A DNA stretch of 64,000 nucleotides, from sequence record PP793740.1; one strand, written 5' to 3'. Below are positions 2,960 through 37,481 of the stretch, one piece after another. Both the position numbers and the translations under genes were made by a program. The notes under the pieces were generated by a model. It did not search any database, had not been told where the DNA came from, and saw only the letters and a program-made list of their open reading frames with translations. Position 1 is the stretch's first letter. Each line of letters opens with the position of its first letter.

Positions 2960-3235
2960 CTATTGACCAATATACGTGCTGGTGTATAATTCAATGGTTG
3001 GTTTATGAATGGTCAGATTATATTTCTTAGCTAAATCATCAATATCCCTGGAACAATCAATGAATTTGCCAGTCTCTCGGTAGCGCATCACCCATGAACC
3101 CCGAAATGGTGCATCATCTAATGGATTAATACCATATTCACGACATACCACAATTGCTTCATGTCGTGGAGTAGCACCAGTAGTGACAAAGTGATTTTCA
3201 TAAACTGGGATCATTGATACATCTTTATTGCTCAT
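2960..3235 (-). CDS. Hypothetical protein (91 aa), paralogue of 4229..4480
   Basis: Start moved to MSNKDV, which follows a GAGG RBS; REYGINP...RG.WV.R...TG.FID motif. Confidence 0.7.
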   Translation of the reverse strand: MSNKDVSMIPVYENHFVTTGATPRHEAIVVCREYGINPLDDAPFRGSWVMRYRETGKFIDCSRDIDDLAKKYNLTIHKPTIELYTSTYIGQ

Positions 3236-14107: not shown

Positions 14108-16558
14108 TTACTTAATGGCACGATTCACAGCAGTGTTAATTGCATTGGTAAGAGCTACAATGTAATCAACTAGAACGGTGTGGTTTTCAGCCGATTGGCC
14201 AACAACTTCCCATACTGCACTAGCTAGTTGCCGGACTTTCTTTTTACCGGCTTTACTATCCATGCTAGCCACTTTAGAGATATCACGGTTAGCTTGGTCA
14301 AGACGACGTACACCGCGGTTACCGCTAACTTTTAGAGAGGCATTACCAAGACCAATTAGAACTTTAGAAAGTTTCATTAGTTCAGTAACGTCCTTACGGC
14401 TAACTTTAGCAGTAGCAGTACCGGTAGCACCCCATTCACCAGTTGGAAGTGCAATAGCAGCTAATCGTTCAATATCTTTACTAGTGCGACCAGTTACATC
14501 ACGGCCAGACTTCTCGAAGGTAAAACTACCTTCTAGTTTTCCACTGATAAATGAACTCTCAGGATATTTCTTAACAGGTACTTCTAATTTAGTTGCTTCT
14601 TCTAGAGCCTTATCAATAGCTTCTTCACTATCAGCTTCAATAGCAGTTGATAGGTGACCAACTAAACGTTCGATGTATTCACCATCGATTTTGAAGCATT
14701 TGTTAATAATATCGCTAATACGACGAACTTCTCCAGCAACACCGCGTACTAGATTATCATCACCTTTTAGAATACCATTAATTTTGATTTCTTTATTTTC
14801 AAAATTATCAGTATCTTTAAGCTTAACTAGAAGTTGGTCAGCTTTAGTATTAGCTGCGGCTAGTTCTTTTTGGTTAGCTTTAACATGGATGGATGCATTT
14901 GCACCTTCAGCAATGTTGTCGATAATATTTCGAACAAACTTACCAATAGTGCTATTAAATGATTCTAGCGAAGTAACCATCGCCTTATAGTAATCTTCTA
15001 GATTACCATAACCATAATCTTCCATTGCTGGAACACCAGGTGAATAGACATCAAAGGCGTTATGCAGGCGTTCTAAACAGCTATTAGCATGTACGATGAA
15101 CTGAGGACTATATTGCTTATGTTCTAGGCCATAATGTAGAATCTCAAGCATGGATTCATTTGATGCCTGCTCTTCAAGTAATTGACCAATGGTTTTCTTA
15201 CCATCTTCAATGTCATCTTCAAGCTTATCGGCTTCTTCAACTGCCTCATCAGCAGTCTCGTCAGCTTCTTCAACATCATCTTCAGTTACTTCTACGTCAA
15301 CATCCGGGATGTCAATTTCACCTTCAGCTAACTTTTCTTCGATGTCATCTTCTGAAACGTCATCATCTGTTTCTGCAACAATTGTTTCACTGTCGTCTTC
15401 AACAGCACCTTCTTCAATTGTTGGTTCGGAAATAGTAGATGCCGTTTCGGTTTCAGCAACTGTTTCTTCAGTTTCAGCTTCATTGATTAATACATCAGTA
15501 GAATCACTGTCATCATTAGTTAATTCTTCTTCAGCTTCATCCCGAACTTCTTCCAATTCGCTTAAGCCTTCTTCAGCTACTTCTGCTGTTTCGGCAGCTT
15601 CTTCTACAATTGGATCAGTTACAGCTACTTCTTCATCAACTGCTACGATTTCATCTGGTTCAGCTTCAGCAGGAACACTTTCAGATTCCGCCTCTACTAC
15701 TTCAGCTACTTCACTATCAGTTGTATCCGGCGTATCTTCTACGGTTTCAACAACTTCTGTTTCAGCATCAGCTACAGCTGGTTCAGTAATTTCGACTTCT
15801 TCTGTTTCAGTGATCTCTGTCTCAGGTTCATCATTGGAACTTTCATCAGCAGTTGTTTGCTCAGCACCGGCTTCTTCAGGAGTTACATCGTCATCAATAC
15901 CAGGGACTGCTTCACTTACAACTTCACCAGCATCTAACACTTCATCTGGTAGTGTATCCATGGTTGATGAAACAGGTTCATCACCAGCTGGAAGTTCCTC
16001 AGATAGTGGTGCAGGCGGTGGAGTTTCGTCACCAAGTGGGGTTTCTTCAGTGGGGGTTAATTCCACTGCTGTTTCACCAGGTGCTTCTGCAACAGGTACT
16101 AGTTCAGTATCATCAGCCGCATCTTGTGCAGCTTCAATAATTTCAGTGGTTGAATCTAAAACCTCTTTACCGCCTTCAGAAATTGTACCGATTTCTTCAG
16201 CGATTTCAGCTTCAGCAACTTTAACTGCTTCTTCGCCTTCTTCGACACTAGTGGTAGCTAGCGGTTCAGGAATACTTTCCTCAACAACAGTTTCTTCTGG
16301 TACAACTTCTTCAACAATTACTGCTGACTTATCAGCAGCATGTGCTGTTTCTTCATGTTCTTCAGCAGAGATAATATCAGTATCTGTTTTAACAGTTTCA
16401 TTCTCAATAGTTGCAGATGCATCATTATCTTTCTTTAAATCTTGAACTAGTTCATGATCATCTTTAACAGATGTCTCGACTTTGGATACATCCTGTTCCA
16501 CAGCCGTACCATCTTGGTTCTCAAGGCTGGCTACATATTTGTGAATATTTACCATCAT
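14108..16558 (-). CDS. Internal head (inner body/ejection) protein with long acidic propeptide (phiKZ gp97-like)
   Basis: About 500 aa rich in E/D/T/A, then an SLES protease site and a compact C-terminal domain. Confidence 0.8.
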   Translation of the reverse strand: MMVNIHKYVASLENQDGTAVEQDVSKVETSVKDDHELVQDLKKDNDASATIENETVKTDTDIISAEEHEETAHAADKSAVIVEEVVPEETVVEESIPEPLATTSVEEGEEAVKVAEAEIAEEIGTISEGGKEVLDSTTEIIEAAQDAADDTELVPVAEAPGETAVELTPTEETPLGDETPPPAPLSEELPAGDEPVSSTMDTLPDEVLDAGEVVSEAVPGIDDDVTPEEAGAEQTTADESSNDEPETEITETEEVEITEPAVADAETEVVETVEDTPDTTDSEVAEVVEAESESVPAEAEPDEIVAVDEEVAVTDPIVEEAAETAEVAEEGLSELEEVRDEAEEELTNDDSDSTDVLINEAETEETVAETETASTISEPTIEEGAVEDDSETIVAETDDDVSEDDIEEKLAEGEIDIPDVDVEVTEDDVEEADETADEAVEEADKLEDDIEDGKKTIGQLLEEQASNESMLEILHYGLEHKQYSPQFIVHANSCLERLHNAFDVYSPGVPAMEDYGYGNLEDYYKAMVTSLESFNSTIGKFVRNIIDNIAEGANASIHVKANQKELAAANTKADQLLVKLKDTDNFENKEIKINGILKGDDNLVRGVAGEVRRISDIINKCFKIDGEYIERLVGHLSTAIEADSEEAIDKALEEATKLEVPVKKYPESSFISGKLEGSFTFEKSGRDVTGRTSKDIERLAAIALPTGEWGATGTATAKVSRKDVTELMKLSKVLIGLGNASLKVSGNRGVRRLDQANRDISKVASMDSKAGKKKVRQLASAVWEVVGQSAENHTVLVDYIVALTNAINTAVNRAIK

Positions 16559-16657
16559 GTTAATATACCTTCTGTACAGAGTTTATGAGTTATGCTATTC
16601 GTCTTAGTCATAACTCCAAGCGACGAACGTTAACATTCAAAATATTGCGCTGGAATC

Positions 16658-17773
16658 TTACTTTAGATTTTCATCGCATACATTGAGTATGGCAGTCAAA
16701 TTACGACATGTTAATTTAAATAGGTCGTGATAAGGAATAGCCAACCAATCAACATATGTTTCTACCAATGAAACAAGTTCTTGTATTTCTCTATCAGGTC
16801 GCCCTTCATTACGAGCACGTGTTAGTTCATCTCTAAACCTGATTAATGCACCTTTAAGAGTCCTTAACCGTTCATTTCGACGAGTACGCATTGATGCAGC
16901 ATTTGCACGATTGATCTTATCAACTACCTTAACAACTCGATCAATAATACTTTCAGTAACTTGATGGTTGAAATGTTCAAATTCTATTTCGACTGGTAGT
17001 GGTCTAGGGGTTTCTTCAGATGGAACTAACCGTGAAGAAATATCCCTACACTGATCATAAGCACTTGCATTCTTATCGGGATTATAGTTAATTACAATTT
17101 GATGATTACCTAGCAAATGCAATGATACAAATCGATTACCTTGATCGCGATAAACAGATGGTGTGGTTATTTTAGTTGGGGCACTATTTAATAGTAGTTC
17201 TGCTAAAGCATCTGGACTAGCATTTGGATTCATATACGAAGGTATGATATTAGCTGGCCTTAGAATCACATTGTCTAATCCATTGATATACCCATCAACT
17301 ACTGTCTCCAATACGCGTAAGTGAGATAACAAATTAGCACTATTGGTAATAGGTTTATATCTAACACTTAAGTTCTGAATACGAGTTGTAATTAGAAATG
17401 TAGGATTCTTATTTTTACGAGTTCTAGCACGACTGTTAACTCGTAAGTTTTCTGCTCGAATTGCAACATATTCAGCAGTAGCTGCTAGCACTACTCCACT
17501 ATCCATCAGTTTCTCAATAGTGGTAACAAATAGTTTTATAACTCGATCAATAACATGTTTAATAGTATCACTAATATCTTCAGTAGATACAACATCCTCT
17601 AATTCTTTGATAACCCCTTGGATCTGATTATAATCTTCCATACCGCCTAATAGATCCATCACTCGCCTAGCTAACGCTTCATCGCCTGATAATAAATCTG
17701 CAAGTCTTTTAGGTTCATCAAGATCAATAATCATTTCATCTGGAGTATCTTTATAAATATCAATTAATTCCAT
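16658..17773 (-). CDS. Internal head protein (phiKZ gp96-like)
   Basis: 371 aa; VSTED cleavage motif; synteny. Confidence 0.75.
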   Translation of the reverse strand: MELIDIYKDTPDEMIIDLDEPKRLADLLSGDEALARRVMDLLGGMEDYNQIQGVIKELEDVVSTEDISDTIKHVIDRVIKLFVTTIEKLMDSGVVLAATAEYVAIRAENLRVNSRARTRKNKNPTFLITTRIQNLSVRYKPITNSANLLSHLRVLETVVDGYINGLDNVILRPANIIPSYMNPNASPDALAELLLNSAPTKITTPSVYRDQGNRFVSLHLLGNHQIVINYNPDKNASAYDQCRDISSRLVPSEETPRPLPVEIEFEHFNHQVTESIIDRVVKVVDKINRANAASMRTRRNERLRTLKGALIRFRDELTRARNEGRPDREIQELVSLVETYVDWLAIPYHDLFKLTCRNLTAILNVCDENLK

Positions 17774-17834
17774 TGCTAACTCCTAACATAAGACGGGACT
17801 CTTCCGAGCCCCGTCGATATGTCGTCACTTATCA

Positions 17835-19478
17835 TTATTCTGCTTGGAATTTAGTGTTAATTACACTATTATAAAGTCCAGTTGCAGTATTTGCGTAACG
17901 CATTGCTTCACGAATAATGGAGTCATGTTTAGGTGCACTATCTGTAATAATAGATGCTACCTTACGTGATACTTCTTCGATCTGTTCTTTAGAAACATCG
18001 TCGATTTTATCACTCTCTAGTTTCCGTGAAAGTTGATCAACATCATCTTCAAGTTGCTTAATGGCTTTAACAATATTCCGACCGCCAGTGATAACATCAG
18101 CTGCATCATCAACCAGATTACGTAGAGCTACCGCTTCTTTCTTAGCTTGACTCTTATCAAAGTTCTTTAAAGTCACTTCAGTGCCAGGTTCTGCGGCTGT
18201 CTCATCATCCGTTAGATATACTTGAGTAGCAGTCGTAGTTACAAGCTTATTACCCGGTAAAGTGTTAGATGTACTAGCGTAGTGTTTGAGAGGTCCATCT
18301 TGAAGTTTGTCCATCTTCTCAACTAGTTCACTAGCATCATTACGCTCTGGATCCCAAGCTTTAAGCACAGTACCAATATTCGTTAGGTAGGTAGCATAGT
18401 CTTTTGCATATACAGATGCCATCCATTTAACGATAGGGCCATATCCAACGTTAGCTGAAGGCTGAATGAATTTACCATTAGCAAATACGGGTCCACCATT
18501 TTTAACAGGAACCGTTAATTCACTGGGTATATTTTCAAACTTAGCATTTTGGATAGCTAAAATGAGTTCATCAACTTTTACACTCACACGCGGTACACTA
18601 TTCTTAAGACTATCCCATACGTGGCTAATAATTTCACGTAGTTTAGCAATAGCTTTCTTGATATAAGCAAGCGCCTTACGACTTAACTCTTTAATATCCT
18701 CAGTTGAAATCTTAACTGGATATAAATGACTTTTACCACCAGTCGTATAGTTTTCTAATGAGCTAGTTAAAGTATTATCACCAAGTACATGACGATGTGG
18801 TAAGAGTGCAGAATGAATAAATGCAGCTGTACTTTGACTGATACCATTAATACCAGCTTGTCGAACAAGAGCTTTAATCGACTCTAGGGCATATGCGGTA
18901 TTTAGACCTTGATTAATATCTTGCACTGCTGTAGTAACTACTTGTGCATTACCAATGTCCATGAAATCAGTAGGTTTATCCATATCCACTGCAACAGCGA
19001 TCTGTGGCACCACGCCATTATGCGCTAGTGGAATAGAACTATCTTTGGCAGCCTGATCAGCGATTTGCTGAGTTACTGTTTCACCACCTTGTGGTTCCTC
19101 TCCTTCGGCACCTGCTGGAATAACTGTTTCAACAGCAATATTAGGTTGTTCAGGAATAGGGGGTACTTCTGTTACTACATCTGTTTCAACTACGGTAACT
19201 GGTACAGCTGGTTGTTCAACTAGAGTAGCAGCTGGAGTCTCAACAATAACGCCATTATTAGGAGTATTAACAATAGTGGTATCTGCATCCACTGGTGCAG
19301 TTGGTGTTACACCAACATTATTGTCAGTCACATCTTGAATAGTATTTTCAGGTACAGCGTCTTCAGAAATACAATCGCCACTAGTCATGGCTGCTACTTT
19401 ATCAACTGCTGTTTCAGGAATAGGTACCTCAGTATAGTCTTCTAGACTATCTAGATACTCATTGAGTTTAAATGTCAT
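17835..19478 (-). CDS. Internal head protein, gp93/94/95 paralogue family (gp95-like)
   Basis: 547 aa; ALES, SLEN and ISTED motifs; G.GIS.QSAAF.H family signature. Confidence 0.8.
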   Translation of the reverse strand: MTFKLNEYLDSLEDYTEVPIPETAVDKVAAMTSGDCISEDAVPENTIQDVTDNNVGVTPTAPVDADTTIVNTPNNGVIVETPAATLVEQPAVPVTVVETDVVTEVPPIPEQPNIAVETVIPAGAEGEEPQGGETVTQQIADQAAKDSSIPLAHNGVVPQIAVAVDMDKPTDFMDIGNAQVVTTAVQDINQGLNTAYALESIKALVRQAGINGISQSTAAFIHSALLPHRHVLGDNTLTSSLENYTTGGKSHLYPVKISTEDIKELSRKALAYIKKAIAKLREIISHVWDSLKNSVPRVSVKVDELILAIQNAKFENIPSELTVPVKNGGPVFANGKFIQPSANVGYGPIVKWMASVYAKDYATYLTNIGTVLKAWDPERNDASELVEKMDKLQDGPLKHYASTSNTLPGNKLVTTTATQVYLTDDETAAEPGTEVTLKNFDKSQAKKEAVALRNLVDDAADVITGGRNIVKAIKQLEDDVDQLSRKLESDKIDDVSKEQIEEVSRKVASIITDSAPKHDSIIREAMRYANTATGLYNSVINTKFQAE

Positions 19479-19565
19479 GTTATTTCCTCAAGGAATTTCT
19501 TTGCGCGCGTTTAACAATAAACCATAGAATTAGGTACTTAGATAAAAATGAACACTTAGATATAT

Positions 19566-21083
19566 TTATTGGCCATATCTTTCTAATTCCATATTACAAA
19601 CAGCATTTCGTTGCTTTGCAATACGTAATAGGTAACTAATTAGTGTTGCGTATTCTGGTGACATATCGGTAATAAAGCCATTAACTAAAGATATAATCTC
19701 ATTTGCATCATCACGAGCACCTTTCCAAATAGCTTTAGACCTACGTAGCTCCATGTCCTCAATGCCCTGTGCAACCTTCTTCAGTTGTTCAAGGACATCT
19801 TTTTCAGCTTTAAATAGATCACCTAAACGACGAATAGCTTCTTTATTAACTTCTAATGTTTTACGCACTTCAACAGGCGGCCTTGGCTCGATCGTGATTG
19901 TATCTGGACCATCACCATGTTTATCTTCACCAAGTCGTGGAGCATATTTATCTTTCTGGAATATAAGTTTACTATTACCAGGTAGAGAAGTATCTTTTAC
20001 TTTATTTAACTGATTAGCTTCACCAATAAATTCAAAAGCCTCTTTAAACTTATCTAGTTCATTATCTTCTAAGTCGTAGTCTTTAATTAATTTAACTACT
20101 TTATCAATGTTTGATCTAGCTATATTTGGCCATTCTTTAGCTAGAAATTGACTAACTTTTGTTTCATTAGTTAAATCGTCTAAAACAAATTCATCACCAA
20201 TGAATAACATTTTAGGATTGTCAATTTTAATTGACATATCAAAATCAGGTGTTACCCTTTCATTTGATACAGTTGGCTTATTGATTAAACTTTTCGCTTT
20301 TTCAATTAACTCATCAGTTTTATCTTCAACTGATTTGATTCCAGTTAGTACACGCTGTGCCGCTACTTTAGCTTGTTCAATAACATGGACTATTAAAGCA
20401 AGTATCTTTTTACCTATACTTTCAATACGTTCTTTTATTTCTTCTTGAGAAATATTTACAAAACGCATAGCGCTGCTAGGGGTTGCATTAAAATCTTCAA
20501 TACTAATCTTTTCAAAGCCGATAAGCTTATCAATTGATTCTAATGTAACGTGCATAAAAGCAGCTGATTGTTTAGTAATACCTCTATCACCAGCGGTATT
20601 TAATAAATCTATAAAACATTCTAAACTAGTACGCGCATGCAGTAATTGATTTAGCTGATATGTCATGTTTTGAGATGGAGGTGTATCATACGCAAAGATA
20701 TTTAAATGATCATCATCACTATCTAAATCTTTACCATCCACTGGTGTAGGTCTATTATCAGGACTTTCTCGGGTATCATGGGGTGATGCTGGATATTCTT
20801 CTGATGCGACGTATGTTTTACCAAATGAATCAACTTCAGTAACTAAACCACGATCTGATTTCCAATGGATATTAGGTTTATGTGCTTCTTCAACATCTAA
20901 CCCATTATTAGTTGCTTTTACATCATTTGGTAATTCATCAATTAATTTGGCAGCTTCTTCTGGTTCTTTAGATATTTGCTTGTCGTCTGTAGCAGCGTGC
21001 TTTAGTTTGGCTTTCGCGACTTTTTCTTTTACTTCGACAACACCATAACCTTCTAAACTATCAAGTAACTTATTTAAGTTCAT
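19566..21083 (-). CDS. Internal head protein (gp94-like)
   Basis: 505 aa; GITKQSAAFMHV, SIED and SQEE motifs. Confidence 0.8.
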   Translation of the reverse strand: MNLNKLLDSLEGYGVVEVKEKVAKAKLKHAATDDKQISKEPEEAAKLIDELPNDVKATNNGLDVEEAHKPNIHWKSDRGLVTEVDSFGKTYVASEEYPASPHDTRESPDNRPTPVDGKDLDSDDDHLNIFAYDTPPSQNMTYQLNQLLHARTSLECFIDLLNTAGDRGITKQSAAFMHVTLESIDKLIGFEKISIEDFNATPSSAMRFVNISQEEIKERIESIGKKILALIVHVIEQAKVAAQRVLTGIKSVEDKTDELIEKAKSLINKPTVSNERVTPDFDMSIKIDNPKMLFIGDEFVLDDLTNETKVSQFLAKEWPNIARSNIDKVVKLIKDYDLEDNELDKFKEAFEFIGEANQLNKVKDTSLPGNSKLIFQKDKYAPRLGEDKHGDGPDTITIEPRPPVEVRKTLEVNKEAIRRLGDLFKAEKDVLEQLKKVAQGIEDMELRRSKAIWKGARDDANEIISLVNGFITDMSPEYATLISYLLRIAKQRNAVCNMELERYGQ

Positions 21084-35093: not shown

Positions 35094-35100
35094 CGAAATA

Positions 35101-35123
35101 AACCCTCCCGTAATGGGAGGGTT
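35101..35123. terminator. Bidirectional terminator
   Basis: AACCCTCCC-GTAAT-GGGAGGGTT followed by TTATG. Confidence 0.7.
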
Positions 35124-35196
35124 TTATGATGTGTCGAAGTTTATGTTAGCAGTAATGATCAATTGATAATATTTAATTAGGAATACCTTCCATTTT

Positions 35197-35565
35197 TTAA
35201 TATCCTTCATTAAGTAGTTCTGCTAGAGCACGTGCCTGTGAAATATCAGTAGAAGCAAAAACATCAGAAAGATAGTTATCATGTTCTTTTGCATTCTGAC
35301 GCAATTCATCCATTAGATGTTTATTAGATACCGCCCATACTTTCCACAGATTTTTATAATCATCATATTTGGGATTATACCCGTCTAGTGGTGGTTTTCC
35401 TTTACCAGCTTTCCAATGGTTGGAGTATATGCGATATCCTTTACAATCTAACTGCCAAGCTTCCTCAATTGTTCTGCCATCAGGAAGCCTTGCGTAAAGA
35501 GCCGAGAATCTTTTGTCACCAACAGATGAACATTCATATCCTCCTCGGCGCTTCCACTGATATAT
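35197..35565 (-). CDS. Unannotated 122-codon frame with no ATG/GTG/TTG at its 5' end; possibly NADAR-like; ATA start or -1 frameshift extension of the polymerase
   Basis: Hand translation IYQWKRRGGYECSSVGDKRFSALYARLPDGRTIEEAWQLDCKGY...FASTDISQARALAELLNEGY; fills the gap exactly. Confidence 0.65.
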   Translation of the reverse strand: MYQWKRRGGYECSSVGDKRFSALYARLPDGRTIEEAWQLDCKGYRIYSNHWKAGKGKPPLDGYNPKYDDYKNLWKVWAVSNKHLMDELRQNAKEHDNYLSDVFASTDISQARALAELLNEGY

Positions 35566-37481
35566 TACTTTGGGTTCTTATAGGTATTAATAAACTTCTC
35601 TAGCAGGGTGTCCATTTTAGGAGCACCCATGATCTTCTGTGTGATTTCAATAGCATTAACCCTACCACCTGTTAAGTTTACGCCAACTTCACGGCGATGG
35701 TGTTCACTAATTCCTTCCATCATTGAGAATTCCATCACACATGTTTCACGTGCAATATTTAGAATCTGACTAACGTTAGGATATGTCGACACGATGTCAA
35801 GGTCGGCGATATGACAGAAGATTAAGGTTTTATAATTCGGTAAATCTTTAACACACTGCAATCCATTTGGACCTGCCATGTATGATGGTAGTGTAACAAT
35901 CCAATCATTATGGCCAATAACATATTGATCAAGTTCATGCACCATCTGATCTGAACTTGAACCAATGACACATGGCTCTGGTCTATTCAAATACCAGAAG
36001 TGCATATCGTCACATAGTCGTTTTGGGTTAGAACTAAAGTTCTTATAGTCAGATGCCTTAGAGAATAGACTTATAGAGCGACCAAGGTCATTTACTTGTT
36101 CATCAAGTTGTTCTAGTCGAATGGAGTCGATGATGTTATAAAGACCATATTTGATTTTATGCTTAGTCTGCATCTCACGGTGCCAATCGATACCACCAAG
36201 ATGTGCAGTTTCTTTAAAGGTTAACTTACCAAATTCCATTACATATCTAATAGAATCACCATAGGTAAAGTTATCATTTAATATAAAATCATCCACCGGT
36301 ACCCATTCATTACTACCTACATTTTTAATATATTTAGTAATAACGCCGCCTGGTCGGTCAACTAGTTGTTTATTAAAACCTTCAATAAAATCTTCTAAGT
36401 CCTTATCATTTTTAATGGTCGTGGATTTATCGATGTTTAGTTCTTTTCTAAGAATAGACTCTAACCGATAGTTAGGATCACGTCCTTTAGCTAATCGAGT
36501 TACTCGATAAGTTGACATAGAATCGATACATTGAAAACTAGAGGGTGCTGTAATCCAATGCCATTGATCCTCCGGTCCTTTAGATTTAGTGACCCCAGAT
36601 GCAGTGGTGGTCATAGGTTCGTCAATCTTAAAATGGAAATACCTATAATTCTTAGGTACCGATGGATCAGAAAAAACATCAGCTGGATTAACGCCATAAT
36701 GTTCTAATGTTTTTAAGATTCTGCCAATGTCGAAGCTAATATTCCAGAATGCGAAGAAATCTGGTTTCCAGATATGTAGTCGTTTAAAACATTCAATAAT
36801 AATATCCACTGGTGTTTCAACAACCATTACTTCAATATCTAGACCACGTTCTTTAATTAGATGCGATAGCACCTCTTCTTTTTGTGCTTGTTCTAATGTC
36901 TCTTTCACTGGATCTTCAATATCACTAACCCATCGTTTTAAATAGGCTAAGAAAGCTTTGTTCTTATGTGTAACTGACATACAGATAATCTGACCATCGT
37001 TCTCAGCTTCATAAACGTTGGTTTCGATGTCACCGCCAGCAACAGTGTTTAGAGAGATTAGACCAGGATAACGTTCTTGATAATCATGCTTCAGATAACA
37101 GGTTGAACTAACATCACTGCCATATAGGTAAGGACTACGCGCTAGTTGACGAAGAGATCTAGCCGAATAGTCACCTAGGATTTTACTAATCTTACGTTTC
37201 ATGTCAATTTGAGTTGACATGTATTTAACTAAGTTACGCTCATATTCGTAATCTTTCTTTTCTTTATGGTTACGCATTCCTTTTGAGGTAATCCAAAAAG
37301 GACGCTGGTAGTTTTCCCACATCCTTAAATTATTTGCAGTTGTACCATCTTCAAAATGAATTCGTTCTTTAACGAAATGCGCATCTGTAAACTTACCAAA
37401 TTGATCAGTACAATAAGTAATATGTTTGGCTTCAATGCCCTTAATCTTTTTCTTATTTGTAACCTGTTGTTCATTAGACAT
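35565..37481 (-). CDS. Split family-B DNA polymerase, 3'-5' exonuclease half (phiKZ gp82-like)
   Basis: ExoI GDIET, ExoII WNISFD, ExoIII YNIIDS and motif A DIVSTYP. Confidence 0.85.
   Translation of the reverse strand: MSNEQQVTNKKKIKGIEAKHITYCTDQFGKFTDAHFVKERIHFEDGTTANNLRMWENYQRPFWITSKGMRNHKEKKDYEYERNLVKYMSTQIDMKRKISKILGDYSARSLRQLARSPYLYGSDVSSTCYLKHDYQERYPGLISLNTVAGGDIETNVYEAENDGQIICMSVTHKNKAFLAYLKRWVSDIEDPVKETLEQAQKEEVLSHLIKERGLDIEVMVVETPVDIIIECFKRLHIWKPDFFAFWNISFDIGRILKTLEHYGVNPADVFSDPSVPKNYRYFHFKIDEPMTTTASGVTKSKGPEDQWHWITAPSSFQCIDSMSTYRVTRLAKGRDPNYRLESILRKELNIDKSTTIKNDKDLEDFIEGFNKQLVDRPGGVITKYIKNVGSNEWVPVDDFILNDNFTYGDSIRYVMEFGKLTFKETAHLGGIDWHREMQTKHKIKYGLYNIIDSIRLEQLDEQVNDLGRSISLFSKASDYKNFSSNPKRLCDDMHFWYLNRPEPCVIGSSSDQMVHELDQYVIGHNDWIVTLPSYMAGPNGLQCVKDLPNYKTLIFCHIADLDIVSTYPNVSQILNIARETCVMEFSMMEGISEHHRREVGVNLTGGRVNAIEITQKIMGAPKMDTLLEKFINTYKNPK

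What the first reader, a model, noticed from the sequence alone, without database searches (positions are those of the whole stretch)
35197..35574. Start-less ORF hooked to the DNA polymerase stop through a C CCA AAG slippery site; possible ADP-ribose-removing domain
Seen in sequence: the polymerase exonuclease half ends AAC CCA AAG TAA, so C CCA AAG (35568-35574) is a perfect XXXYYYZ heptamer directly before the stop. The -1 frame continues CCC AAA GTA ATA TAT CAG TGG... to a stop at 35197, filling the gap up to the terminator, with no canonical 5' start or RBS. Established: XXXAAAG heptamers shift efficiently in bacteria. Inference: the motif order (FSALYA, TIEEAWQ..KG, LWK.WA..N..L..EL, L.D.FAST..Q.RAL..LL) loosely resembles NADAR hydrolases, which reverse DarT1 guanine ADP-ribosylation. 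If so, a fraction of the polymerase could carry a lesion-removal module. Alternatively TAATG mutated to TAATA, or ATA is used as a translationally coupled start. I saw no strong stimulatory structure.
Basis: partly seen in the sequence, partly recalled or inferred. Interest (0 to 1): 0.72.

Follow-up and report, generated by a model that had tools for sequence, protein, structure and literature searches.

The report
Frameshift-extended phiKZ DNA polymerase isoform
At the end of the giant phage phiKZ's gp82 DNA polymerase gene, a classic slippery sequence very probably lets some ribosomes slip back one base and add a conserved 123-residue enzyme-like domain that every genome annotation has missed.

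Summary
The window is a phiKZ-type Pseudomonas phage. gp82 ends AAC CCA AAG TAA. The -1 frame is closed by a TAA two codons before the heptamer, then stays open for 123 codons to 35197, with no ATG, GTG or TTG in its first 87 codons.

This ORF is a real gene. It matches phrog_9995 over its full length (E 1.8e-55), has more than 800 relatives, dN/dS of 0.03-0.2, and an AlphaFold pLDDT of 96.

All 16 distinct chimallivirus loci with the ORF in the -1 frame carry an in-phase C CCA AAG, G GGA AAG or A AAA AAG inside the short permitted window. The background is 6 per 13,054 positions. These are the three best -1 motifs in E. coli. The codon at the start position drifts (ATA, ACA, ACT, GTT, GTA, ATG, GTG). 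Two relatives encode polymerase and domain as one uninterrupted ORF.

I conclude -1 programmed frameshifting makes a 761-residue, 88 kDa gp82 isoform (confidence about 0.8), with no direct protein evidence.

The NADAR idea stays a lead. Sequence and profile tests fail, and fold matches are sub-threshold but NADAR-rich. The domain's fusion partners (DUF4326, SLOG) are those typical of NADAR.

I found no prior report.

The parts
35565..37481 (-). gp82-type DNA polymerase gene (0 frame), 638 codons plus TAA; product 74.1 kDa
   Evidence: ORF list. phrog_3011 'DNA polymerase', E 2.7e-241. Annotated as DNA polymerase PHIKZ082 in phiKZ. Mass.
35578..35580 (-). TAA stop in the -1 frame, two codons 5' of the heptamer; it limits any productive -1 shift to the heptamer itself
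   Evidence: Sequence. Only 2 permitted positions.
35568..35574 (-). Slippery heptamer C CCA AAG, in phase with gp82
   Evidence: Conserved or replaced by G GGA AAG or A AAA AAG in 16 of 16 -1-frame loci. Among the three most efficient -1 motifs in E. coli (PMC4066793).
35565..35567 (-). 0-frame TAA stop of gp82, directly 3' of the heptamer ('shifty stop' context)
   Evidence: In 8 of the 10 distinct group A junctions a stop (TAA, TAG or TGA) abuts the heptamer. In 201phi2-1 one codon intervenes.
35197..35568 (-). -1 frame extension: GTA, ATA, then the domain, 123 codons plus TAA (14.4 kDa). Predicted fusion is 761 aa, 88.4 kDa, with junction ..N-P-K-V-I-Y-Q-W-K..
   Evidence: Translation. Masses. 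dN/dS 0.03-0.2 against relatives.
35563..35565 (-). ATA codon at the position where standalone homologues and PhiPA3 have ATG and 201phi2-1 has GTG
   Evidence: Alignments A1 and A2. Other relatives have ACA, ACT, GTT or GTA here.
35200..35565 (-). Conserved 122-residue domain of family phrog_9995; enzyme-like, possibly a minimal NADAR-like fold
   Evidence: phrog_9995 E 1.8e-55, positions 2-123 of 124. 500 and 826 relatives in two searches. 30 invariant residues. pLDDT 96.3. Fold hits. Fusion partners.
35197..35313 (-). What databases annotate as PHIKZ082.1 (38 aa): only the C-terminal third of the real ORF
   Evidence: phiKZ RefSeq annotation. phrog_33573 matches residues 88-125 only.
35448..35537 (-). 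29-codon ORF (MNVHLL..) annotated in many relatives. Probably spurious: its GAGGAGGA and ATG are the R-G-G-Y-E codons of the real ORF read in another frame.
   Evidence: The same nucleotides encode the conserved RRGGYEC.
35100..35124 (-). Intrinsic terminator hairpin closing the gp82 transcription unit, shared with the convergent gp83 gene
   Evidence: Terminator scan. Only terminator-like weak Rfam matches.

Best explanation
The 3' end of the phiKZ-type gp82 DNA polymerase gene is a programmed -1 ribosomal frameshift site.

Most ribosomes read AAC CCA AAG and terminate at TAA, giving the 638-residue gp82. A fraction slip back one base on C CCA AAG, so the tRNAs re-pair with CCC AAA. The slow-to-decode stop codon next in line probably helps. 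Those ribosomes then read GTA ATA TAT CAG and on for 123 more codons. The result is a 761-residue, 88 kDa isoform, gp82 with a C-terminal phrog_9995 domain.

Shown here:
- the anatomy of the junction;
- purifying selection on the start-less ORF;
- phased conservation and co-variation of the heptamer;
- natural in-frame polymerase-domain fusions in relatives.

Inferred:
- that the slip actually occurs, and how efficiently;
- that the domain is an enzyme.

My best guess for its role, at about 40-50%, is a minimal NADAR-like glycohydrolase or another ADP-ribose or modified-base processing activity. Tethered to the replicative polymerase, it would act on template DNA at the fork.
For: 1. The ORF is real and selected.
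- It matches phrog_9995 over its full length and belongs to a large conserved family.
- dN/dS is 0.026-0.21 with saturated dS between start-less copies.
- The AlphaFold model is confident.

2. It cannot start normally. There is no ATG, GTG or TTG in the first 87 codons. At the homologous start position relatives carry ATA, ACA, ACT, GTT or GTA.

3. The heptamer is conserved in phase.
- 16 of 16 distinct -1-frame loci carry X XXA AAG inside permitted windows of 2-122 positions. The background is 4.6e-4 per position.
- Three different heptamers occur: C CCA AAG, G GGA AAG, A AAA AAG.
- The preceding codon varies in amino acid (N, P, S, L, V, A, G) but always ends in the matching base. C ends only 15% of gp82 codons.
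- These are the three most efficient -1 motifs in E. coli (PMC4066793).

4. Between the window and PhiPA3, dS is 2.5, yet CCCAAAGTAAT is identical.

5. Rosetta-stone fusions exist. P0348 is one 698-aa ORF containing a gp82-like polymerase and the domain, next to a phiKZ major capsid gene. P0264 joins the polymerase C-terminal segment to the domain in frame.

6. Where the 0 frame continues past the heptamer (A AAA AAG loci), its tail is short and unconserved, as expected for a frameshift overlap.
Against: - There is no direct evidence of the 88 kDa product, the junction peptide or -1 frame ribosome footprints. I found none in the literature or in the supplementary tables I could search.
- No conserved stimulatory RNA structure or upstream Shine-Dalgarno-like element was found. 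Bare V VVA AAG heptamers shift only about 0.3% in E. coli (PMC4066793), so the yield may be low.
- PhiPA3 (ATG) and 201phi2-1 and Viktualia (GTG) could also make the domain as a free protein. PS119XW-type phages have a GTG overlapping the TGA stop.
- A sister group of loci has the ORF in the +1 frame, with no recognisable shift site.
- Frameshift rules come from E. coli, not from Pseudomonas infected by phiKZ.
Confidence: 0.8

Rival explanations
1. The ORF is an independent gene, translated by termination-reinitiation at the overlapping UAAUA. The ATA codon acts as a weak non-canonical start and gives a free 122-residue protein. The heptamer would only reflect a conserved Pro-Lys polymerase C-terminus.
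For: - Outside chimalliviruses the family is mostly a standalone protein of 122-130 residues starting M-x-[FY]-x-W at exactly this position.
- PhiPA3 has the classic coupled TAATG. 201phi2-1 and Viktualia have GTG. PS119XW-type phages have GTGA.
Against: - ACA, ACT and GTT at this codon in L009, L011, L014 and L012 are two mismatches from AUG, yet those ORFs are under purifying selection.
- The A AAA AAG loci overlap the polymerase gene by 20-80 nt and have no start codon at all.
- A conserved Pro-Lys terminus does not explain the matching third base of the preceding codon, or the switch to G GGA and A AAA.
- There is no Shine-Dalgarno sequence before the ATA.
Confidence: 0.12
2. In the phiKZ clade the gene is a recent relic: ATG mutated to ATA, the protein is no longer made, and the ORF has simply not decayed yet.
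For: The phiKZ clade is very shallow (98.8-100% identity), so intactness within it proves little. One base separates TAATA from PhiPA3's TAATG.
Against: - Start-less copies are found in several deeply diverged lineages (57-72% protein identity). All are intact, all keep the invariant residues, and dN/dS is 0.03-0.2.
- PS119XW-type phages, whose copy is only about 67% identical, also have ATA.
- In-frame fusions show that the polymerase-linked form is functional.
Confidence: 0.04
3. The frame change happens in the RNA. The phage RNA polymerase would stutter on the A run and add one A, rather than the ribosome slipping.
For: The A AAA AAG loci contain runs of six A. An inserted A would give the same frame.
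Against: The window and its group have only AAA, far below the runs of about 7-9 known to cause transcriptional slippage (my own knowledge). The conserved feature is the phased XXX YYY pattern including CCC or GGG, which matters to tRNA re-pairing and not to RNA polymerase.
Confidence: 0.03

Closest known systems
Phage lambda tail assembly chaperones G and GT (and the conserved tail-gene frameshift of dsDNA phages)
   Same: A -1 programmed frameshift on an X XXA AAG heptamer (G GGA AAG in lambda) near the end of the upstream gene. It gives a minor C-terminally extended isoform besides the major short product. The downstream ORF has no start of its own. The site is recognised by comparative conservation. 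This is from my own knowledge; motif ranking is in PMC4066793.
   Different: Here the gene is a core replication enzyme, not a virion assembly factor. The appended part is a widely distributed enzyme-like domain that also exists as a free protein.
E. coli dnaX (tau and gamma subunits of DNA polymerase III), A AAA AAG
   Same: -1 frameshifting in a replicase gene on the same class of heptamer. A AAA AAG itself is used at this junction in the Noxifer-type relatives.
   Different: dnaX frameshifting truncates the protein after one codon and uses an upstream Shine-Dalgarno sequence and a downstream hairpin. Here it extends the protein by 123 residues, and no conserved stimulator was found.
IS3 and IS911 orfA-orfB transposase frameshift
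   Same: A AAA AAG-type motif that fuses two ORFs. The second ORF lacks an efficient start (PMC4066793).
   Different: Those sites have pseudoknot or hairpin stimulators that give high efficiency. Here a 0-frame stop directly after the heptamer is the only recurrent context.
NADAR ADP-ribosyl-glycohydrolases (DarG1-type antitoxins, T4 AdfN gp30.3, E. coli YbiA)
   Same: - Similar size class.
- Co-linear motifs: FS[AN]F loop, DG, E-x3-Q-x3-K helix, G-basic-x-basic-P, W, an acidic residue on a late strand, and a final N-x-[AL]-x-x-L helix.
- NADAR proteins are the best non-family fold hits.
- The same fusion partners, DUF4326 and SLOG (PMC9503650, PMC7824862).
- Phage NADARs counter DarT1 (PMC11257639).
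   Different: - No significant sequence or profile match.
- About 30-40 residues shorter.
- The Glu-to-Lys spacing is 8 rather than 7.
- No equivalent of the YWG motif.
- Activity is untested.

Membership tests
-1 programmed ribosomal frameshift site (heptamer type) | X XXY YYZ heptamer in phase with the upstream (0) frame | tested here: met
   C CCA AAG at 35574-35568, in phase with gp82.
-1 programmed ribosomal frameshift site (heptamer type) | The -1 frame is open from the heptamer and encodes a selected protein with no start of its own | tested here: met
   123 codons follow, with no ATG, GTG or TTG in the first 87. phrog_9995 E 1.8e-55. dN/dS 0.03-0.2.
-1 programmed ribosomal frameshift site (heptamer type) | Heptamer conserved across diverged relatives beyond what the protein sequence requires | tested here: met
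   16 of 16 loci against a background of 4.6e-4 per position. Three alternative heptamers, each with a matching upstream wobble base.
-1 programmed ribosomal frameshift site (heptamer type) | Stimulatory element: a downstream hairpin or pseudoknot 5-9 nt away, or an upstream Shine-Dalgarno-like sequence | tested here: not met
   Consensus fold -8.3 kcal/mol with almost no covariation. In the window the structure starts 10 nt after the heptamer, z = -2.3, and differs between relatives. The only recurrent context is a stop codon directly 3' of the heptamer.
-1 programmed ribosomal frameshift site (heptamer type) | Trans-frame protein detected | not testable with these tools
   No report or table entry found. 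In-frame natural fusions are indirect support only.
phrog_9995 (uncharacterised phage protein family) | Full-length match to the family profile | tested here: met
   E 1.8e-55, residues 5-125 on profile positions 2-123 of 124.
NADAR superfamily (Pfam PF08719) | Significant match to the NADAR sequence profile | tested here: not met
   No PF08719 hit at E up to 10 for any of 42 members. hhalign against two NADAR alignments gives P 0.26-0.35.
NADAR superfamily (Pfam PF08719) | YbiA-like fold | tested here: inconclusive
   - PDB library: the highest TM score is NADAR 8bau, but TMq is 0.43 and E 4.4.
- BFVD library: more than 10 NADAR proteins among the top 50, TMq 0.43-0.59, probability up to 0.54.
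NADAR superfamily (Pfam PF08719) | Catalytic Glu and Lys on the first helix (E36/K43 in T4 AdfN, E88/K95 in E. coli C7 NADAR) and a late acidic or His residue | tested here: inconclusive
   Invariant E34, Q38 and K42 lie on the first helix, with Glu-to-Lys spacing 8 instead of 7. Invariant D101 lies on the late strand. Equivalence rests on a non-significant alignment. Residue roles are from PMC11543638 and PMC11257639.
NADAR superfamily (Pfam PF08719) | Hydrolysis of ADP-ribose from guanine in DNA, or another N-glycosidic substrate | not testable with these tools
   A biochemical assay is needed.
Translationally coupled gene pair with overlapping stop and start (TAATG or GTGA type) | A start codon overlapping the upstream stop | tested here: not met
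   The window has TAATA (ATA). The feature is met in PhiPA3 (TAATG) and in PS119XW-type phages (GTGA), but not in L009, L011, L012, L014 or Phabio.

The most novel reading that the evidence does not exclude
Chimalliviruses keep an accessory enzyme on their replicative polymerase through an evolutionarily plastic recoding junction. The same domain is attached in different lineages by:
- -1 frameshifting on three different heptamers;
- an unrecognised +1 or -2 event at an invariant GAA AAG AAG;
- a TAG that must be read through;
- plain fusion.

The domain would be a minimal NADAR-type hydrolase that strips ADP-ribose, or another bulky base adduct, from template DNA at the fork inside the phage nucleus.
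Probability: 0.25. Interest if true: 0.85.

Novelty: new member of a known kind. Interest (0 to 1): 0.7.

Why it matters
phiKZ is the model nucleus-forming jumbo phage, and gp82 is a core-genome replication protein whose knock-down blocks the phage (PMC12571901).

If the frameshift is real, several things follow.
- Every phiKZ-like genome annotation misses a conserved 123-residue coding region and a second polymerase isoform.
- Proteomic, interaction and knock-down data for 'gp82' and 'gp82.1' need re-reading.
- The domain is a widespread family with no Pfam or NCBIfam model. It has more than 800 representatives and also sits inside giant multi-domain phage proteins. It would gain a first functional context, physical coupling to DNA synthesis, together with an ADP-ribose-related domain neighbourhood.
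- That gives a direct test: does a polymerase-tethered hydrolase protect phage replication from DNA-modifying defences such as DarT?

Tried and rejected
- **Pfam, NCBIfam and PDB sequence searches of the domain.** Nothing meaningful came back. The weak uL3 and GAUT_1 matches are noise.
- **hhalign against NADAR.** I tried YbiA-type NADARs alone, then added eight phage NADARs. Neither was significant.
- **A conserved downstream hairpin or pseudoknot, or an upstream Shine-Dalgarno-like element.** None was found. A GGAGGA/UCCUCC hairpin in PhiPA3, L009, L011 and L014 starts about 17 nt downstream and is broken in the window.
- **Rfam around the junction.** Only terminator-like sub-threshold hits.
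- **Sequencing error.** Rejected: 33 identical genomes.
- **Pseudogene.** Rejected by dN/dS.
- **A separate upstream -1 frame ORF feeding in.** Rejected, because TAA at 35580-35578 closes that frame.
- **Literature and supplementary tables on phiKZ and 201phi2-1.** Searches for frameshift, gp82.1, ribosome profiling and transcription start sites gave nothing on this junction.
- **RNA-seq counts.** The 082.1 segment is about 15 times more abundant than the gp82 body, but it co-varies with it. Other 3'-terminal '.1' ORFs behave the same way. I read this as 3'-end fragment accumulation, not as a separate gene.
- **The +1 frame loci.** I could not work out their mechanism.
- **A suppressor tRNA near the in-frame TAG locus.** None within the 6.4 kb held.
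- **The fused protein.** The pieces were analysed apart.
Full report
**What the window is.** The 600 bases around the finding are 100% identical to 33 sequenced Pseudomonas phages of the genus Phikzvirus (PA7, KTN4, SL2 and others). They are at least 98.8% identical to the other 14 records that matched. At protein level the ORF is 99.2% identical to phiKZ itself. The gene on the - strand at 35565..37481 is the phiKZ gp82 homologue. It is annotated as DNA polymerase and matches phrog_3011 'DNA polymerase' at E 2.7e-241. A 2025 antisense screen lists it among core-genome genes whose knock-down impairs the phage (PMC12571901).

**The observation.**
- On the - strand gp82 ends AAC CCA AAG TAA. The heptamer C CCA AAG is 35574-35568 and the stop is 35567-35565.
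- The -1 frame reads CCC AAA GTA ATA TAT CAG TGG and stays open to TAA at 35199-35197.
- It contains no ATG, GTG or TTG until the Met of MDELRQ at 35313, so the ORF finder does not list it.
- Two codons before the heptamer the -1 frame has a TAA (35580-35578). A productive shift can therefore happen at only two in-phase positions, and the heptamer sits on one of them.
- Databases annotate only fragments. phiKZ has 'PHIKZ082.1', the last 38 codons. Many other genomes also carry a 29-codon ORF in another frame, or nothing at all.

**The ORF is a real, selected coding sequence.**
- It matches phrog_9995 from end to end (E 1.8e-55).
- A word-indexed search found 500 relatives. Those listed are 84-186 residues long, mostly about 122-130. 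An exhaustive profile search found 826 cluster representatives.
- The alignment has 30 invariant columns, many of them charged or polar (E11, D17, R19, D29, R31, E34, Q38, D40, K42, K55, K57, D101, Q110). This suggests an enzyme.
- AlphaFold2 gives a compact alpha/beta domain with mean pLDDT 96.3.
- Between start-less copies from different phages, dN/dS is 0.026-0.21 while dS is saturated. The pseudogene idea fails.

**Comparative anatomy of the junction.** I fetched 80 loci from IMG/VR with the family alignment and several GenBank phages. I found 25 distinct junctions where the ORF directly follows or overlaps the end of a gp82-like gene. They fall into four classes.

- **Group A.** The ORF is in the -1 frame and, in 8 of 10 junctions, a stop follows the heptamer directly. 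In the list below the trailing bases after the stop complete the -1 frame codon at the start position.
  - window and phiKZ: AAC CCA AAG TAA TA (codon at the start position ATA)
  - PhiPA3: CCC CCA AAG TAA TG (ATG)
  - L009: AAC CCA AAG TAA CA (ACA)
  - L011 and L014: GTC CCA AAG TAA CT or CA (ACT, ACA)
  - Phabio: GCC CCA AAG TAG TA (GTA)
  - PS119XW-type: TCC CCA AAG TGA TA (ATA, preceded by GTG)
  - L012: CTG GGA AAG TAG TT (GTT)
  - 201phi2-1 and Viktualia: TCC or CTC CCA AAG, then 11-14 nt, then GTG, with the -1 frame open throughout
- **Group C.** The ORF is in the -1 frame with a 20-80 nt overlap and no start codon at all. L018, L019, Noxifer, L022, L044 and L062 carry TCA, GCA, CTA or GGA followed by AAA AAG.
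- **Group B.** Seven loci including Psa21 have the ORF in the +1 frame.
- **One locus pair** (L075 and L076) has it in frame behind a TAG.

**Statistics.**
- All 16 distinct -1-frame loci carry an in-phase X XXA AAG inside their permitted window of 2-122 positions.
- In the remaining 13,054 in-phase positions of the same polymerase ORFs the pattern occurs 6 times, or 4.6e-4 per position.
- Each locus alone has a chance probability of 0.001-0.05. Counting only three independent lineages still gives about 1e-8.
- The amino acid before the heptamer changes (N, P, S, L, V, A, G), but its third base always equals X. C ends only 15% of gp82 codons, and AAG is the minority Lys codon, 19 against 33 AAA.
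- The change from C CCA to G GGA needs three coordinated substitutions. That makes sense only if the XXX identity is what is selected.
- Sharma et al. 2014 measured all 64 heptamers in E. coli. They name C_CCA_AAG, G_GGA_AAG and A_AAA_AAG as the most efficient: about 0.3% bare, and up to 54% for C_CCA_AAG with a pseudoknot (PMC4066793).
- The window and PhiPA3 have dS 2.5 in the ORF, yet CCCAAAGTAAT is identical.

**Rosetta-stone fusions.**
- Among the profile hits, P0348 (698 aa) is a single uninterrupted ORF. It has a gp82-like polymerase (phmmer E 7.7e-47, query residues 47-622) followed by the domain at residues 562-677. Its contig also carries a phiKZ-type major capsid gene.
- P0264 (236 aa) joins the polymerase C-terminal segment to the domain in frame, through GAA CCC AAA GAC. 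Its contig has phiKZ gp85 and gp86 neighbours.
- So a polymerase carrying this domain exists without any recoding. This is the strongest indirect argument that the trans-frame product is functional.

**Mechanism proposed.**
- Ribosomes decode CCA and AAG. With tRNA-Lys on AAG and the UAA stop next, the tRNAs re-pair to CCC and AAA. The next codon read is then GUA.
- The product is gp82 (74.1 kDa) plus V-I-Y-Q-W-K and the rest, 123 residues (14.4 kDa). That totals 761 residues and 88.4 kDa.
- No conserved hairpin, pseudoknot or upstream Shine-Dalgarno-like element was found. The adjacent stop codon is the only recurrent context ('shifty stop'; Weiss et al. 1987, from my own knowledge).
- Efficiency therefore cannot be predicted and may be low.
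- The slip itself and its rate are inferred, not shown.

**Rivals.**
- Initiation at ATA by termination-reinitiation could add some free protein, and PhiPA3 (TAATG) probably does make a free form. It cannot explain ACA, ACT or GTT at that codon, the start-less overlapping A AAA AAG loci, or the matching wobble base.
- A relic gene is excluded by selection in several deep lineages.
- Transcriptional slippage is unlikely on AAA.

**What the domain is.**
- *Sequence methods find nothing.* Pfam gives no NADAR hit in 42 members at E up to 10. NCBIfam and PDB sequence searches are empty. hhalign against YbiA-type NADARs, and against a broader set with eight phage NADARs, gives P 0.26-0.35.
- *Foldseek on PDB.* Nothing is significant, but the highest TM score by far is a NADAR bound to ADP-ribose (8bau, TMq 0.43).
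- *Foldseek on BFVD.* After four family members, the list is dominated by NADAR and DUF4326 proteins (TMq 0.43-0.59; best named-NADAR probability 0.54).
- *Fusion partners.* Among 80 multi-domain representatives, 19 carry DUF4326, 8 carry SLOG domains (YAcAr, cpYpsA), 3 RNase H and 2 DUF488-N3a. One each carries an AlkB-like oxygenase, guanylate kinase and DprA. One more carries a PIF1/RecD helicase.
- *Giant proteins.* The domain also lies inside proteins of 2000-6000 residues.
- *Published context.* Iyer, Burroughs, Aravind and co-workers describe DUF4326 and SLOG domains as typically fused to Macro and NADAR domains in phage NAD/ADP-ribose conflict systems (PMC9503650, PMC7824862). This domain therefore occupies the architectural niche of NADAR.
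- *Precedent.* Phage NADARs such as T4 AdfN remove ADP-ribose from DNA and defeat DarTG1 (PMC11257639; PMC11543638).
- *My reading.* An ADP-ribose or N-glycoside processing enzyme, possibly a minimal NADAR, at about 40-50%. Membership is not established.

**Novelty.** I found no paper or annotation that describes a frameshift in gp82 or a full-length gp82.1. The mechanism is textbook, as in lambda G/GT, dnaX and IS3. The case is new, and it concerns a core replication gene of a model jumbo phage.

**Limits.**
- All evidence is comparative.
- Frameshift rules are taken from E. coli.
- The tree of the 122-residue domain is poorly resolved at depth.
- Metagenomic loci are not independent samples in a strict sense.
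- The +1 frame group and the TAG locus are unexplained.

Noticed in passing
L015, L020, L024, L029, L030, L031, L033 (Psa21), around locus positions 2980-3025: In a sister group of phages the same ORF lies in the +1 (= -2) frame of the polymerase gene and overlaps it by 20-23 nt. The codon at the start position is GTG, GTG, TTG, CTG, CTG, ACG or CGG. An invariant GAA AAG AAG (polymerase frame) lies immediately 5' of it while the flanks vary. This fits no canonical -1 or +1 site. It may be a -2 slip of tRNA-Lys, or reinitiation. On the domain tree this group is sister to Phabio, which has C CCA AAG.
   Followed up: partly
L075 and L076, 2990-3010: Here the domain ORF is in the same frame as the polymerase, separated only by TAG (GAT TAG CTA ACC TTT CAG TGG). 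This suggests stop-codon readthrough or a reassigned TAG. No tRNA gene lies within the 6.4 kb held.
   Followed up: partly
L008 (PhiPA3) 2411-2716; L075 about 2305-2673: The PhiPA3 gp82 homologue is interrupted by a group I intron (Rfam RF00028, 71.7 bits, E 3e-18) after the residue equivalent to 562. This explains why its annotated gp085 stops 577 nt before gp084. L075 has an insert of about 370 nt at the same place.
   Followed up: partly
L100 3990-4005 (contig WPCG01120037.1 of GCA_009771185.1): In this phiKZ-like contig the polymerase is split into two ORFs of 482 and 236 residues (..GAA TAC TGA tt ATG GAA..), about 25 residues before the PhiPA3 intron site. The second ORF runs in frame into the domain through GAA CCC AAA GAC, so the heptamer letters are kept but are now in frame.
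   Followed up: partly
window 35448-35537 (-): A 29-codon ORF (MNVHLL..) with an apparently perfect GAGGAGGA Shine-Dalgarno sequence is annotated as a gene in many phiKZ-like genomes. The same bases are the conserved R-G-G-Y-E-C codons of the real ORF, so the small ORF is most likely an annotation artefact.
   Followed up: yes
phiKZ 80128-80244 = window 35197-35313: In the RNA-seq tables of PMC12571901 (supplement 7), the PHIKZ082.1 segment has about 15,000-20,000 normalised counts against about 800-1,700 for gp82, and the two co-vary across samples. Other short '.1' ORFs just upstream of terminators show the same excess. This suggests stable 3'-end RNA fragments.
   Followed up: partly
proteins P0256, P0259, P0274, P0275, P0281, P0291, P0311, P0347, P0352 and others: The domain is embedded at various positions in giant proteins of 2000-6000 residues. 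The five largest I scanned (1360-2291 residues) have no Pfam hit. These may be phage 'polyvalent' or injected multi-enzyme proteins.
   Followed up: partly
L099 2883-2958: A tRNA-Arg(TCT) gene lies directly upstream of the in-frame polymerase-domain fusion gene in the metagenomic phiKZ-like contig.
   Followed up: no
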